This document shows, piece by piece, positions 11,386 through 21,397 of a DNA stretch of 64,000 nucleotides. Made by a program: the position numbers and the translations under genes. Position 1 is the first letter of the stretch; each line of letters opens with the position of its first letter. Under the pieces are notes generated by a model, which ran no database searches, was not told the DNA's origin, and saw only the letters and a list, made by a program, of their open reading frames with translations. The stretch lies in the sequence record PP355768.1; one strand, 5' to 3'.

Positions 11386-11461
11386 TGGAGCGACTAGGGG
11401 GAATCGAACCCCACTCAGTACCGCTTGGAAGGCGGACGCTGTAACCCGTACAGTTAGTCGC
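11386..11461 (-). tRNA. tRNA-Gly(TCC)
   Basis: Canonical cloverleaf, CCA end. Confidence 0.95.
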
Positions 11462-11599
11462 GGAATTATTTTATTACGCAAGTGCAGCCACCCGAGAATA
11501 TAGATCCGTAACACTTGTCGCACATAACGTCTTCTATTTTAAGAACTCTAAATTTCATAGGGGGTTATTACCTGTAGTAATATGCTTACCTTTTAGGGT

Positions 11600-11669
11600 T
11601 GCTGGCTTCCGGAATTGAACCGGAATTTAATGACAATGTAAACTTAATCACACTGTAACCATAACCAGC
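11600..11669 (-). pseudogene. Degenerate tRNA (intact acceptor and T arms; no CCA, no anticodon stem)
   Basis: GCTGGTT/AGCCAGC acceptor, TCCGG-TTCAATT-CCGGA T arm. Confidence 0.6.
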
Positions 11670-12692: not shown

Positions 12693-12904
12693 CCCTAAGT
12701 CAATGCCACTACTTGAGACGTTATAGGCAATCTATCTCAAGTTGTCTGCCCCATTGCTTTCAGTGATTTCTGCACGCAGAAATTCTTCTTGACTGGAGGA
12801 CTTTACCACGTCAAACGGCCGGAAATCAGTGGCTTATTTTATCCTGTCACCCATTACCTGCTTGTCTGAGTTTAATCAGAGAGCCTGTAACGGGCTACTT
12901 GGGA
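12693..12904 (-). ncRNA. Candidate ~210-nt multibranch RNA
   Basis: No ORF; closing helix plus several internal helices. Confidence 0.5.
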
Positions 12905-12906
12905 TT

Positions 12907-13015
12907 TGGAAGTATCAGTTGGATTCGAACCAACGCACCGGCTAACCTAGAGATCACCAGACGTTTCCAAGTCTGCTCACTAACGGCCAGCTGCTTTACC
13001 GTGAGCTTTAGGACT
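12907..13015 (-). ncRNA. tRNA-like RNA with helical extension replacing the anticodon loop, CCA end
   Basis: D arm GCT-CACGGTAA-AGC, T arm GTTGG-TTCGAAT-CCAAC, encoded CCA. Confidence 0.75.
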
Positions 13016-13048
13016 ATTCAGCTCCATAAGCTATTGATACTATTAATT

Positions 13049-13126
13049 TGGTGCAACCGGTTCGATTTGAACGAACGACCCCTGGACTTTCAAACCAGTG
13101 CTCTCACCTCGCTGAGCTACAGTTGC
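13049..13126 (-). tRNA. tRNA-Phe(GAA)
   Basis: Cloverleaf, U31:U39 mismatch, CCA. Confidence 0.9.
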
Positions 13127-13207
13127 GTAATTCGTGCCTGCTCCTTTGAATCAAGAAGTCCACCCCGGTCTTTGGGTCTTTGCAGTACATCACGCTGCTC
13201 TGATGTT

Positions 13208-13295
13208 TGGTGGAACTTGGGAGACTACGTGCTACTCCCCTCACAGACCGGGATTCCCCGCTATCTATGATGCTTAACCGATTAGCTGAAGTCCC
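13208..13295 (-). ncRNA. Anticodon-less tRNA mimic with alanine identity
   Basis: GGGACTT/AAGTTCC acceptor (G3:U70), A73, CCA, D arm, 11-nt T loop. Confidence 0.75.
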
Positions 13296-13377: not shown

Positions 13378-13552
13378 ATGGATATGTTATTGTTACTTCC
13401 CATACATGAGCATAGCAGCTTTTCGATACTATATGGGTTTCCGCTTCTGTTAAAGCGGCTTCAAATGTATCATGTAACGTTGTACCTTCGAATTTAATAC
13501 TTGAATCTCCCGTTTGGGACTCTCTTGTTACAAACGCCTTATACTTAATCAT
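13376..13552 (-). CDS. 58-aa hypothetical protein
   Basis: Start refined to MIKYKAF (GAGG SD); the upstream part of the track ORF is tRNA-Cys. Confidence 0.7.
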   Translation of the reverse strand: MIKYKAFVTRESQTGDSSIKFEGTTLHDTFEAALTEAETHIVSKSCYAHVWEVTITYP

Positions 13553-13867: not shown

Positions 13868-13945
13868 TGGCGGGAGAGGTGAGATTCGAACTCACTGTCA
13901 TTCGCTTAACAGGCGACCGCCTATACCACTTACTGCTTCTCTCCC
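13868..13945 (-). tRNA. tRNA-Asn(GTT)
   Basis: Cloverleaf, CCA. Confidence 0.95.
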
Positions 13946-13955
13946 AAATAGATTT

Positions 13956-14047
13956 AACAACCAAAGCGCTTTCGTCCATTTAAGCTACAAGGCCTTTATG
14001 CCGCCTGTTGCGTACGCGGGATTCGAACCCGGATCTCTTTGATTGTC
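13956..14047 (-). ncRNA. Circularly permuted tRNA-like RNA (YrlA-like topology)
   Basis: T arm precedes D arm; ends pair as an 11-bp stem in the anticodon-stem position. Confidence 0.75.
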
Positions 14048-14052
14048 AAAAT

Positions 14053-17560: not shown

Positions 17561-17573
17561 AGTTAATATAAGA

Positions 17574-17667
17574 TGATGCCTCGACTACACCGGGCTGTTT
17601 AAGCCCCGCCAGGATTCGAACCTGTTAAAACAGTGTTTCCACCAGCCGTAGGTTTCACTGAACATCA
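17574..17667 (-). ncRNA. T-arm-containing RNA with paired ends
   Basis: TGATGTT/GGCATCA closing stem; GAAA hairpin; CAGG-TTCGAAT-CCTG; GC hairpin. Confidence 0.6.
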
Positions 17668-17671
17668 AATT

Positions 17672-20153: not shown

Positions 20154-21397
20154 CGCCAGTAGGTAGGGGCCTTCCCCTGTTTAAGCTATGCGGCCCTTCT
20201 GTCAGACGTATCTTCCAGTTATAGTCAAGGTGACTAATATACCTTGCCAGATCCCGGCCAACGGATATCCGTCGGCTAATGCGGTCTAGGCGAGGGCACA
20301 CTCCAAACAGGGGCACTTCTAGCCTGTGTAAGGGTGCTATAAATAGTGGTTATGCTTTCGCTCGGGGTGACTCCGGTCATGACTCCATTGTCACATGCTT
20401 ACACAGGGTATACGAGCTTCCGCGGAGCTGTATACTCAACCGTGTCCCACTTAGGTCTCGGAGCCACCGTTTGTACGAACGGCTATCCGAATACTCTTTC
20501 CCACTTAGAATCAGGCGAGATCCCACCTCGCCAAAGTTCATACGATCATCATGCCGTATTTAAGGACTAGCTTTGGCACTTCTGGAGAGCCATCCTCCAC
20601 GCGGTCTGTTAAAATCACACCTCCGAATTTTCGATGTGAAGTTTGGCTATCTCTAGCCTTCCAGCGTATGGTCGCTTCGCACCTGCCACTCTTACGTTCA
20701 AATCGGTTTAGGTGGTGGCAACCCTCCGAAGTTCCGAGTTTGGTTGAGGCCGTCAGGTTTCCTCGTGGTTTAGCTGTTTCGTTCCCGCGAGTCTCCCAAG
20801 TCTTTCCCTGGGAGGGGAGGAGGTACTCCAGCAGCGAGTGGTTCGCCAATAGAACCATCAGTTATCTAGCTCTTTCCGACCGCAGGATTCGAACCTGCAC
20901 TTTCCGCATCTGGGGATAGCTCCCCGCGTGCAGAAGTCTACCAATTAACTTAGGACGGCAGTGTTGCTACATAAGTGATTTCGACACCCCACTATGGTGG
21001 CAATAACCAGCACCAGACGCTATACACATGTCTCCAATTTGCAGCCTAGGCAGGTCAGTGTGGGAGCTATACGAGTTTCTCAGGCTCAGTTCCCCACCTC
21101 TCCGGCAGGCCACGCACCATGCTTCATTCTGGTCGAACAAGTTAAAGTGAGATTCCACCATTTTCTATAAATCAGGAGAAGAGTTTACGAGACTCCGGGA
21201 CAGCTCCCGAGTTTTACAAGAGATCTCTAACCTACGCCCGTCCAATACGCTCCCTGGCCGGTATCCGGACTGGATGCACGAACTTTGTCAGGTGATCACT
21301 CTTAACTCACCGATTCTATTCAACGAATCTTAATGCTCGACGAGTCTTACATTAAAACAAGTTCAGCGTAATCGGCCCGCTGTTCTCTCTAATTTAT
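20154..21397 (-). ncRNA. Candidate giant structured RNA (~1.2-1.3 kb, possibly more than one RNA)
   Basis: No SD-led ORF; over 20 hand-found helices; embedded tRNA-like domain; dedicated promoter. Confidence 0.65.

What the first reader, a model, noticed from the sequence alone, without database searches (positions are those of the whole stretch)
12907..13015. 109-nt tRNA mimic: anticodon loop replaced by a ~40-nt helical extension
Minus strand reads: AGTCCTA, D arm GCT-CACGGTAA-AGC, GCTGGC...GCCGGT stem enclosing CAGAC-TTGGAAAC-GTCTG, T arm GTTGG-TTCGAAT-CCAAC, TGATACT-T-CCA. The elbow and CCA are canonical. The acceptor has two mismatches and there is no 7-nt anticodon loop. It cannot decode, and no bacterial-type group I intron is visible.
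Basis: partly seen in the sequence, partly recalled or inferred. Interest (0 to 1): 0.7.

Follow-up and report, generated by a model that had tools for sequence, protein, structure and literature searches.

The report
Unannotated tRNA-like RNA gene in phage
A T5-like Klebsiella phage carries, inside its tRNA gene cluster, a conserved 135-base gene for a tRNA-shaped RNA that cannot decode, of the same kind as the 'tRNA-like stable RNAs' annotated with unknown function in phage T5.

Summary

- **Location.** The window is a Sugarlandvirus (T5-like) Klebsiella phage. It has 25 tRNA genes on the minus strand.
- **True extent.** The RNA spans window 13041-12907 (minus strand) and is 135 nt, not 109.
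- **Acceptor stem.** It pairs perfectly with TGATACT and co-varies in relatives.
This is really the invariant loop of an extra hairpin inserted in the D loop.
The T arm, the 3' CCA, the long arm and its 8-nt tip loop are all there.
- **Support for the fold.** Across 14 homologues, 98% of pair cells are paired and 11 pairs show compensatory changes.
- **Tip loop.** UUGGAAA-C is the tRNA-Ser(GGA) anticodon loop plus one base.
- **No splicing model fits.** ARAGORN's 'tRNA-Gln with 46-nt intron' fails covariation.
- **A cassette.** The element sits at two different cluster positions. One Sugarlandvirus has lost it cleanly between CCAAAT repeats. In Proteus phage PM135 it is chimeric.
- **3' end.** In one clade CCA is replaced by UCA.
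- **Closest known.** T5 RNA1 and RNA2 have the same architecture but no detectable homology.
- **Function.** Unknown. My best guess is a non-decoding tRNA mimic acting as a decoy.

The parts
12907..13041 (-). Whole tRNA-like RNA gene, 135 nt, from A1 of the acceptor to the encoded CCA
   Evidence: Covariance model R1 scores 166 bits here and 150-165 bits in 12 homologues. ARAGORN -i gives the same ends.
13035..13041 (-). Acceptor stem, 5' strand AGUAUCA
   Evidence: Perfect 7 bp with 12911-12917. Three pairs have compensatory changes (helix 1).
12911..12917 (-). Acceptor stem, 3' strand UGAUACU
12907..12910 (-). Discriminator U plus CCA
   Evidence: Read directly. The discriminator varies (U, A or C). 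CCA is UCA in the Sealy/KPN4/VAC51/L022 clade, although neighbouring tRNAs there keep CCA.
13028..13031 (-). D stem, 5' strand GCUU
   Evidence: Pairs with 12993-12996. 100% of cells paired; 2 of 4 pairs have compensatory changes (helix 2).
12993..12996 (-). D stem, 3' strand AAGC, preceded by GGUA (12997-13000), the equivalent of G18 G19 U20 A21
13001..13025 (-). Extra hairpin nested in the D loop: 6-bp stem with one bulged A, and a 12-nt loop GAAUAGUCCUAA (13008-13019).
   Evidence: 98.7% of cells paired. Pair 21-38 is G-C in 7 sequences and A-U in 6. The PM135 copy has an extra compensated pair.
12941..12991 (-). Long arm in the anticodon-arm position: 7-bp basal stem (12985-12991 with 12941-12947), an irregular middle section, then the tip hairpin
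Evidence: Basal stem 96.7% paired, 2 compensatory pairs (helix 4).
12958..12975 (-). Tip hairpin CAGAC-UUGGAAAC-GUCUG. The 8-nt loop (12963-12970) is invariant except for one C-to-U change.
   Evidence: 100% paired, 1 compensatory pair (helix 5). A pattern built on CTTGGAAA, GTCCTA and a T loop mostly returned ~90-nt tRNA-like matches to R1; all 4 checked with ARAGORN contain a tRNA-Ser(GGA).
12935..12940 (-). Variable region CGGUGC
   Evidence: It resembles the ..GGU.C motif that precedes the T stem in the neighbouring tRNAs.
12918..12934 (-). T arm GUUGG-UUCGAAU-CCAAC
   Evidence: 100% paired (helix 6). One of 21 GGTTCRANTCC sites on this strand, against 0.34 expected by chance.
13042..13048 (-). 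7-nt spacer AAUUAAU between the CCA of tRNA-Phe and the RNA. The CCAAAT at 13046-13051 is repeated at 12904-12909, and these repeats bound the cassette.
   Evidence: Klebsiella phage JIPh_Kp127 lacks exactly the 142 nt between the two repeats. CCA followed by A is usual after the tRNAs of this cluster.
13426..13453 (-). Promoter-like site upstream of tRNA-Lys, tRNA-Phe and the element. This is a possible start of the transcription unit.
   Evidence: Consensus scan only, 9 of 12 matches, and no more sites than in shuffles. Inferred, not shown.

Best explanation
This is a gene for a 135-nt RNA derived from a tRNA that does not decode. It is the same kind of molecule as the 'tRNA-like stable RNAs' (RNA1, RNA2) annotated in the tRNA cluster of phage T5.

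Shown here:
- It keeps the parts of a tRNA that the maturation machinery reads: a perfect 7-bp acceptor stem, a discriminator, CCA in most copies, a canonical T arm, and a D stem with the GG of the D loop.
- It carries two conserved expansions. One is a hairpin in the D loop with an invariant loop (GUCCUA). The other is a roughly 50-nt irregular arm.
- The tip of that arm is the anticodon stem-loop of tRNA-Ser(GGA) with one extra base (UUGGAAA-C).
- Stems co-vary while loops stay fixed.
- It is an optional cassette, gained and lost between the CCAAAT motifs that follow tRNA genes.

Inferred:
- It is transcribed with tRNA-Lys and tRNA-Phe and is cut out by RNase P and 3' trimming, like its neighbours.
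- It folds into an L shape with a protruding elbow hairpin and an arm about three times the normal length in base pairs. The anticodon-like loop therefore cannot reach a codon while the 3' end sits in the peptidyl-transferase centre.
- It works through its invariant loops as a stable mimic that binds a protein which normally handles tRNA.

My leading guess is a bait for a host factor that recognises anticodon loops, such as a defence nuclease or a modification enzyme. That guess alone has a probability of roughly 0.25.
For: Anatomy and covariation:
- 98.0% of cells paired and 11 compensatory pairs on 14 homologues; 0 of 500 shuffles reach this; slid controls give 19-44%.
- Independent confirmation of the boundaries from ARAGORN -i.

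tRNA context:
- Same strand as 25 tRNAs.
- 7-nt spacer after tRNA-Phe, and the CCA|AAT 3' context is shared with the neighbours.

Tip loop equals Ser(GGA):
- The pattern scan returned mostly ~90-nt tRNA-like matches; all four checked contain a tRNA-Ser(GGA).
- The PM135 tip stem CAGGC/GCUUG is identical to the anticodon stem of one such tRNA.
- T5 and PM135 tRNA-Ser(GGA) carry the loop UUGGAAA.
- The best non-self hit of the model is a phage tRNA-Ser at 47.8 bits.

Invariant loops against varying stems.

Cassette behaviour:
- Two positions in the cluster.
- A clean 142-nt absence in JIPh_Kp127.
- A chimera with the 3' end of tRNA-Pro, next to an HNH endonuclease gene, in PM135.

Distribution: 72 phage records, one metagenome contig and no bacterial genome.

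Same kind in T5: annotated RNA1 and RNA2 fold as tRNA-like molecules with lengthened arms.

Background for the decoy idea: T5 tRNAs neutralise the tRNA-cleaving defences PARIS and retron Eco7/PtuAB (PMC11464382, read; PMC10644984, read).
Against: - There is no direct evidence of transcription, processing or stability. The RNA-library runs were available only as contigs, without strand information.
- No partner protein or target is known.
- The invariant loops have no excess of complementary sites in the window.
- Some Sugarlandviruses lack the element, so it is dispensable.
- CCA is UCA in one clade. Either the 3' end is repaired after transcription or it does not matter.
- The folding energy of the single sequence is unremarkable (z = -1.5).
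- Homology with T5 RNA1/RNA2 could not be shown. 'Same kind' therefore rests on architecture and location only.
Confidence: 0.6

Rival explanations
1. It is an intron-containing tRNA. One contiguous insert is removed to give a normal decoding tRNA, for example ARAGORN's tRNA-Gln(CUG) with a 46-nt intron.
For: With introns allowed, ARAGORN reports tRNA-Gln(ctg) with a 46-nt intron at exactly these coordinates.
Against: - The D and anticodon helices specific to that model are paired in only 75% and 78.5% of cells, with no compensatory change. The competing helices are 97-100% paired and have six compensatory pairs.
- No single excision turns the supported fold into a 5-bp stem with a 7-nt loop.
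- No group I intron or ribozyme family is detected.
- No joint that skips the insert appears in contigs of four RNA libraries (this evidence is weak).
- The cluster already has two tRNA-Gln genes.
Confidence: 0.04
2. It is a working but aberrant tRNA-Ser(GGA). It is charged by SerRS and reads UCC/UCU, or a four-base codon through its 8-nt loop, causing a +1 frameshift.
For: - The loop is UUGGAAA plus one base.
- The window has no tRNA-Ser(GGA), whereas T5 and PM135 do.
- Eight-nucleotide anticodon loops are the classical frameshift-suppressor change. This last point is from my own knowledge.
Against: - The arm carries about 12-14 more base pairs than a 5-bp anticodon stem. By the known geometry of tRNA on the ribosome, that is incompatible with simultaneous decoding and peptidyl transfer. 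This is an inference.
- CCA is not conserved in one clade, and the discriminator varies.
- PM135 has both a normal tRNA-Ser(GGA) and a copy of the element.
Confidence: 0.05
3. It is an aminoacylated or synthetase-binding mimic. It is charged and used outside the ribosome, or it titrates a synthetase such as SerRS, which reads a long arm rather than the anticodon.
For: - Perfect acceptor stem and CCA in most copies.
- The acceptor-D and variable-T regions are closest to phage tRNA-Ser.
- The alternative register places the long arm where the variable arm of tRNA-Ser lies.
Against: - That register is broken in L022.
- CCA is UCA in 5 of 14 copies, while neighbouring tRNAs keep CCA.
- The discriminator is not conserved.
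Confidence: 0.1
4. It is a cis-acting processing element. The tRNA-like fold serves only as an entry site for RNase P or RNase E that separates parts of the polycistronic transcript.
For: - It lies between tRNAs and downstream ORFs in the window.
- The cluster contains several other unannotated pieces that carry a T arm.
Against: - A processing signal needs only an acceptor stem and a T arm. It does not explain two elaborate expansions with invariant loops.
- In the Sealy-type arrangement it sits directly between other tRNA-like genes, which already provide such sites.
Confidence: 0.1
5. It is a decaying tRNA pseudogene or a neutral hitch-hiking cassette, spread by recombination linked to homing endonucleases, with no function as an RNA.
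For: - Presence/absence polymorphism.
- A chimeric copy with an unpaired acceptor, next to an HNH endonuclease gene, in PM135.
- Loss of CCA in one clade.
Against: - Eleven compensatory pairs and 98% pairing across copies that differ by up to about 28%.
- The loops are invariant even in the divergent PM135 body.
- A pseudogene would accumulate changes that break stems.
Confidence: 0.08
6. The region encodes a protein: the 123-aa ORF on the plus strand (12899-13270), which some records annotate as a hypothetical protein.
For: The ORF exists. Several GenBank records place a 'hypothetical protein' over the element.
Against: - The ORF starts with TTG and runs antisense through tRNA-Phe as well.
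- The substitution pattern is that of paired RNA stems.
- The annotation is absent from most records.
Confidence: 0.01

Closest known systems
Phage T5 'tRNA-like stable RNAs' RNA1 (144 nt) and RNA2 (125 nt), as annotated in NC_005859
   Same: - Encoded on the tRNA strand inside the tRNA cluster of a T5-like phage.
- Acceptor-like stem plus a canonical T arm, 125-144 nt, with a much lengthened arm in the anticodon-arm position. RNA1 also ends that arm in an 8-nt loop.
- Function unknown.
- A homologue of RNA2 lies directly upstream of the element in metagenome contig L022.
   Different: - No detectable sequence or model homology.
- T5 RNA1 and RNA2 do not end in CCA in the annotated record.
- Neither shows the D-loop hairpin or the Ser(GGA)-type tip loop.
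Canonical tRNA, in particular the tRNA-Ser of T5-like phages
   Same: - 7-bp acceptor stem, 3-nt linker, 4-bp D stem, GGUA in the D loop, a ..GGUG. variable region, T arm and CCA.
- The best non-self model hit is PM135 tRNA-Ser(GCU) at 47.8 bits.
- The tip loop is the Ser(GGA) anticodon loop.
   Different: - The loop is 8 nt, not 7.
- The arm is about 17-19 bp with bulges, instead of 5 bp.
- There is a 25-nt hairpin inside the D loop.
- The Rfam score is below the gathering threshold.
Phage T4 species 1 and species 2 RNAs (rnaC, rnaD). This comparison is from my own knowledge and was not tested here.
   Same: Small stable RNAs of unknown function, co-transcribed and co-processed with a phage tRNA cluster.
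   Different: No sequence comparison was made. They come from a different phage family.
The tRNA-like domain of tmRNA, and the bacterial Y RNA YrlA
   Same: Non-decoding RNAs that reuse the tRNA acceptor/T-arm or elbow module.
   Different: - ARAGORN finds no tmRNA and there is no tag reading frame.
- Rfam YrlA and tmRNA do not match the locus.
- In YrlA the acceptor end is closed and the anticodon side is open, which is the reverse of the arrangement here. This point is from my own knowledge.

Membership tests
Canonical tRNA (Rfam RF00005) | 7-bp acceptor stem, discriminator, 3' CCA | tested here: met
   AGUAUCA/UGAUACU, then U, then CCA. The stem co-varies. CCA is UCA in one clade.
Canonical tRNA (Rfam RF00005) | T arm: 5-bp stem with a GTTCRANYC-type 7-nt loop | tested here: met
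   GUUGG-UUCGAAU-CCAAC, 100% paired.
Canonical tRNA (Rfam RF00005) | 5-bp anticodon stem with a 7-nt loop | tested here: not met
   The arm spans 51 nt and ends in an 8-nt loop.
Canonical tRNA (Rfam RF00005) | Score at or above the family's gathering threshold (29 bits) | tested here: not met
   21.2 bits, and that alignment uses the wrong acceptor. Default ARAGORN does not find it.
Intron-containing tRNA | Removing one contiguous insert leaves a cloverleaf that the homologues support | tested here: not met
   The helices specific to ARAGORN's intron model are 75% and 78.5% paired, with 0 compensatory pairs. The unspliced fold is 97-100% paired.
Intron-containing tRNA | A recognisable self-splicing intron or ribozyme | tested here: not met
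   No Rfam family other than tRNA matches the locus, even at E-values up to 10.
Intron-containing tRNA | A spliced form present in RNA | tested here: inconclusive
   No joint that skips the insert was seen in contigs of 4 RNA libraries. Contigs drop rare forms, and transcription was not shown.
T5-family tRNA-like stable RNAs (RNA1/RNA2) | Lies in the tRNA cluster of a T5-like phage, on the tRNA strand | tested here: met
T5-family tRNA-like stable RNAs (RNA1/RNA2) | Acceptor-like stem and T arm enclosing an enlarged body of 100-150 nt | tested here: met
   135 nt here. T5 RNA1 and RNA2 fold in a similar way.
T5-family tRNA-like stable RNAs (RNA1/RNA2) | Sequence or structure homology with T5 RNA1 or RNA2 | tested here: not met
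   Model R1 gives 17.2 bits on part of RNA1 and 7.7 bits on the T loop of RNA2. BLAST finds only T-loop words. The MAFFT alignment is poor.
T5-family tRNA-like stable RNAs (RNA1/RNA2) | Accumulates as a discrete stable RNA in infected cells | not testable with these tools
   Only strand-less contigs were available.
tmRNA | tRNA-like domain plus a tag reading frame and pseudoknots | tested here: not met
   ARAGORN -m finds nothing. Rfam gives no tmRNA match.
Class II tRNA-Ser | Both a normal anticodon arm and a long variable arm | tested here: not met
   Only one arm lies between the D and T arms. The register that would make it a variable arm is broken in L022.

The most novel reading that the evidence does not exclude
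The RNA is an anti-defence decoy. Its tRNA body gives it maturation and stability. The arm holds out a copy of the tRNA-Ser(GGA) anticodon stem-loop with one extra base. That copy traps or inhibits a host factor aimed at that loop, such as an anticodon nuclease or a modification enzyme, and so protects the real tRNA pool during infection. The D-loop hairpin may recruit a second partner.
Probability: 0.2. Interest if true: 0.8.

Novelty: new variant of a known kind. Interest (0 to 1): 0.5.

Why it matters
- T5-like phages have been known to make tRNA-like stable RNAs, and their purpose is still recorded as unknown in the T5 record. (That the observation dates from the 1980s is from my own knowledge.)
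- This element is a well-defined new example with unusually clear features:
  - a covariation-supported fold;
  - two invariant loops, one of which copies a specific anticodon loop;
  - natural phages with and without the cassette.
- These features make the question directly testable in Klebsiella phages. That is timely, because T5 tRNAs have recently been shown to counter tRNA-cleaving defences.
- It is also an annotation gap. None of the 13 annotated records opened here marks it as an RNA (two further copies were seen only in unannotated contigs), some records in the 72-record hit table lay a spurious protein-coding gene over it, and ARAGORN run with introns allowed would mislabel it tRNA-Gln with an intron.

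Tried and rejected
Rejected by pair counts.
- **ARAGORN's tRNA-Gln(CUG) plus 46-nt intron.** Rejected by pair counts.
- **A missing tRNA-Gly.** The cluster seemed to lack one, but a 76-nt tRNA-Gly(UCC)-like gene that ARAGORN misses sits at 11386-11461. Sealy-type phages carry both tRNA-Gly and the element.
- **Homology with T5 RNA1, RNA2 and the other T5 stable RNAs.** None was found.
- **Remote homologues.**
  - Searched in T5, Salmonella phage PMBT22 and Vibrio phage Cilsick with model R1. Only ordinary tRNAs matched.
  - A pattern scan of IMG/VR found only the known phages plus one chance hit in a coding region.
  - A metagenome scan found one true copy (L022); the other R1 matches were ~75-95-nt tRNA-like hits, and the four checked with ARAGORN contain a tRNA-Ser(GGA).
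  - A scan of 185,579 bacterial and archaeal genomes found nothing.
- **Antisense targets of the two invariant loops in the window.** No more than expected by chance.
- **RNA-seq evidence.** All runs were served as contigs. There was no splice joint and no strand information, and one contig end at 12745-12749 carried adapter sequence that I could not interpret.
- **A pseudoknot between CCUA of the D-loop hairpin and UAGG on the 3' side of the arm.** It is possible on paper, but every position is invariant, so covariation cannot test it.
- **Register of the basal stem of the long arm.** L022 breaks the former.
- **Literature.** Searches found no description of this element.

Full report
**Context**

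The window is identical to the first 64 kb of GenBank PP355768 (Klebsiella phage vB_Kpn_AM_K6). It is 95-97% identical to many Sugarlandvirus genomes, which are T5-like phages of the family Demerecviridae. ARAGORN finds 25 tRNA genes between 10.9 and 19.9 kb, all on the minus strand, and Rfam confirms them. The finding lies directly downstream of tRNA-Phe (13049-13126).

**Checking the observation**

On the minus strand the following are present as described:
- the T arm GTTGG-TTCGAAT-CCAAC;
- TGATACT, then T, then CCA;
- the hairpin CAGAC-TTGGAAAC-GTCTG, enclosed by a longer helix.

It scores only 21.2 bits against a gathering score of 29.

Homologues in other phages (loci) showed that the 3' acceptor strand varies: TGATACT, TGGTACT or CGATACT. 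A heptamer 26 nt further upstream changes in step: AGTATCA, AGTACCA, AGTATCG. RNAalifold then gave a cloverleaf spanning 13041-12907.

Pair counts settle the matter:
- On seven sequences the revised fold has 96.2% of cells paired and 11 pairs with changes on both sides.
- With 14 copies aligned to a covariance model, the figures are 98.0% paired and 11 compensatory pairs. No shuffle out of 500 reaches these values, and slid controls give 19-44% paired.
- ARAGORN run with introns allowed returns the same 135-nt boundaries.

**Anatomy (RNA numbering; window coordinate = 13042 minus the RNA position)**

| RNA positions | Part |
|---|---|
| 1-7 / 125-131 | Acceptor stem, perfect 7 bp |
| 8-10 | Linker AUA |
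| 11-14 / 46-49 | D stem GCUU/AAGC, two compensatory pairs |
| 15 | A, inside the D loop |
| 17-41 | Hairpin inside the D loop: 6-bp stem with one bulged A, and a 12-nt loop GAAUAGUCCUAA |
| 42-45 | GGUA, the usual G18 G19 U20 A21 |
| 50 | A |
| 51-57 / 95-101 | 7-bp basal stem of the long arm |
| 58-66 / 85-94 | Irregular middle section |
| 67-84 | Tip hairpin with the 8-nt loop UUGGAAAC |
| 102-107 | Variable region CGGUGC |
| 108-124 | T arm |
| 132 | Discriminator U |
| 133-135 | CCA |

Variation falls almost entirely in stems, in the bulged position 59 (alignment column 61) and in the linker. The D-hairpin loop core, the tip loop and a UAGG on the 3' side of the arm are invariant. This holds even in the copy from Proteus phage PM135, which is only about 72% identical.

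For the basal stem of the arm there are two registers, four bases apart. The one adopted here has two compensatory pairs in PM135 and is untouched by the GGU-to-AAG change in metagenome copy L022.

**The tip loop**

I scanned metagenomes with a pattern built from GTCCTA, CTTGGAAA and the T loop.
- Of the 80 loci fetched, model R1 found one true copy (L022); the remaining matches were mostly ~90-nt tRNA-like hits.
- All four loci checked with ARAGORN (L015, L036, L067, L077) contain a tRNA-Ser(GGA), and in L015 the GTCCTA part of the match lay in the flank by chance.
- T5 and PM135 tRNA-Ser(GGA) have the loop UUGGAAA.
- The PM135 copy of the element has the tip stem CAGGC/GCUUG. This is identical to the anticodon stem of one such cellular tRNA.

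The tip is therefore a tRNA-Ser(GGA) anticodon stem-loop with one extra base on its 3' side. The acceptor-D and variable-T regions also resemble phage tRNA-Ser most closely: 47.8 bits, against at most 30 bits for any other tRNA in that search. The window has tRNA-Ser(GCU) and tRNA-Ser(UGA) but no tRNA-Ser(GGA). An origin from a tRNA-Ser is plausible but not proven.

**Why it is not a spliced or decoding tRNA**

- ARAGORN's reading is tRNA-Gln(CUG) with a 46-nt intron. It needs a D stem and an anticodon stem that are paired in only 75% and 78.5% of cells and never co-vary.
- Those helices conflict with helices that do co-vary. One example is pair 21-38, which is G-C in 7 copies and A-U in 6.
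- No single excision turns the supported fold into a canonical arm.
- Rfam finds no intron or ribozyme.
- Contigs from four RNA libraries carry the unspliced sequence and show no joint that skips the insert. They are strand-less and insensitive, and they do not prove transcription.
- The arm has roughly 12-14 more base pairs than a normal anticodon stem. By the known geometry of tRNA on the ribosome, this should prevent decoding. That is an inference.
- The 123-aa ORF on the opposite strand also runs antisense through tRNA-Phe, so it is spurious.

**Distribution and dynamics**

- The element is present in 72 phage records. Of these, 69 are Klebsiella phages (one of them spelled 'Klebseilla'), two are records of Proteus phage PM135, and one is 'Bacteriophage Eos'.
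- It is also in one metagenome contig.
- It is absent from T5, a Salmonella Epseptimavirus-like phage and a Vibrio Thalassavirus.
- It is absent from 185,579 bacterial and archaeal genomes.

It occupies two positions in the cluster:
- after tRNA-Phe, as in the window;
- between tRNA-Leu(UAA) and tRNA-Pro, as in Sealy and VAC51; in KPN4 and L022 a further ~130 nt lie between tRNA-Leu(UAA) and the element, which in L022 resembles T5 RNA2.

Klebsiella phage JIPh_Kp127 lacks exactly the 142 nt between two CCAAAT repeats, that is, the CCA of a tRNA plus AAT. CCA followed by A is the usual 3' context of the tRNAs here.

In PM135 the body of the element is joined, just before the T stem, to the 3' end of tRNA-Pro. 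An HNH homing endonuclease gene and a second remnant of the tRNA-Pro 3' end lie immediately upstream. The acceptor cannot pair in that copy.

In the Sealy clade the 3' end reads UCA, although every neighbouring tRNA keeps CCA. The discriminator is U, A or C in different copies.

Together these observations describe an optional, recombining cassette. Its internal structure is under selection. Its 3' end is less constrained than that of a working tRNA.

**Comparison with what is known**

The T5 reference record annotates eight small RNAs in the equivalent cluster. Among them are RNA1 (144 nt) and RNA2 (125 nt), both described as 'tRNA-like stable RNA with unknown functions'.

Folding shows that both have an acceptor-like stem, a T arm and a strongly lengthened arm in the anticodon-arm position. 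In RNA1 that arm also ends in an 8-nt loop. I found no sequence or model homology between them and this element. I therefore file it as a new variant of that kind rather than as a member of either family.

The window itself contains further unannotated pieces that carry a T arm. This fits the T5 picture.

Recent work shows that T5 tRNAs neutralise the tRNA-cleaving defences PARIS and retron Eco7/PtuAB. It also describes T5 mutants with non-essential deletions in the tRNA region (PMC11464382; PMC10644984). That is the background for the decoy hypothesis. It is not evidence for it.

**Mechanism**

Shown: the fold, the conserved loops, the tRNA context and the cassette behaviour.

Inferred:
- co-transcription with tRNA-Lys and tRNA-Phe, based only on a weak promoter-like site at 13453-13426;
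- excision by RNase P and 3' trimming;
- an L-shaped molecule that cannot decode;
- action through the two invariant loops by binding a factor that handles tRNA.

I rate the identity and anatomy at about 0.9, non-decoding at about 0.8, and the specific decoy function at about 0.25. The rivals, with my confidence in each, are:
- charged carrier or synthetase sponge, 0.10;
- cis-acting processing element, 0.10;
- neutral cassette or pseudogene, 0.08;
- aberrant decoding tRNA-Ser, 0.05;
- intron-containing tRNA, 0.04;
- protein-coding, 0.01.

**Verdict**

This is a real, conserved, structured and unannotated RNA gene. It is not a new class: T5 has comparable RNAs. It is a clean and testable new variant, and its function remains open. 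Interest 0.5.

Noticed in passing
window 11386-11461 (-): An unannotated 76-nt cloverleaf that default ARAGORN misses. It has a 7-bp acceptor GCGACUA/UAGUCGC, discriminator U, CCA and the anticodon loop CUUCCAA, so it looks like tRNA-Gly(UCC). Its D arm is atypical and has no GG. The best Rfam hit at the locus is tRNA-Sec at 29.1 bits (gathering score 47). This removes the apparent lack of a tRNA-Gly in the cluster.
   Followed up: partly
window 11594-11668, 13944-14052, 17561-17671, 20850-20995 (all -): Four more unannotated stretches in the cluster carry a canonical T-arm motif GGTTCRANTCC. Three of them fold better than shuffles, with z-scores of -2.1 to -3.6. The last one matches T5 'RNAX' at 73% identity. 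They are probably further tRNA-like stable RNAs or remnants of tRNAs.
   Followed up: partly
L022 1232-1363 (metagenome contig ERZ1026892 NODE-1580); a stretch of similar length lies in KPN4 (L005 276-407): In L022 the ~130 nt directly upstream of the element resemble T5 RNA2 in their 3' part (...GGUCUCGUAAUUCCGCACAGGUGAUGGUAGGUUCGAUUCC...). Some Sugarlandvirus-like phages may therefore carry two tRNA-like RNAs in tandem between tRNA-Leu(UAA) and tRNA-Pro. The KPN4 stretch was not examined; it is inferred only from its length and position.
   Followed up: partly
L010 5000-5760 (Proteus phage PM135): In PM135 an HNH homing endonuclease gene and the element body occupy the position where related Proteus phages have an intact tRNA-Pro. 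The 3' end of tRNA-Pro is present twice, and ARAGORN finds no intact tRNA-Pro in the 14 kb examined. This looks like a scar of recombination linked to a homing endonuclease.
   Followed up: partly
GenBank PP355768, whole record; examined at 100-130 kb (L143): The source record is 261 kb and is classified as Straboviridae. Its first ~109 kb are a T5-like Sugarlandvirus. Second copies of thyA and nrdB, together with T4-like genes, follow. The record is probably two phage genomes joined in assembly. The sister record vB_Kpn_AM_K4 (288 kb) also carries the element.
   Followed up: partly
window 12745-12790: In one RNA library, short high-depth contigs with Illumina adapter sequence end at 12745-12749. 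This is just 3' of a perfect hairpin AUUUCUGC-GU-GCAGAAAU, about 120 nt downstream of the element. It could be the 3' end of an abundant RNA or a library artefact.
   Followed up: no
L136 8908-9000 and 10805-10901 (Vibrio phage Cilsick); L135 12518-12611 (Salmonella phage PMBT22): Cilsick has a 93-nt gene annotated 'tRNA-Ile' with extra sequence after the anticodon arm. Cilsick and PMBT22 each have an unannotated tRNA-Ser-like gene of 94-97 nt. Odd or missed tRNA-like genes seem common in Demerecviridae clusters.
   Followed up: no
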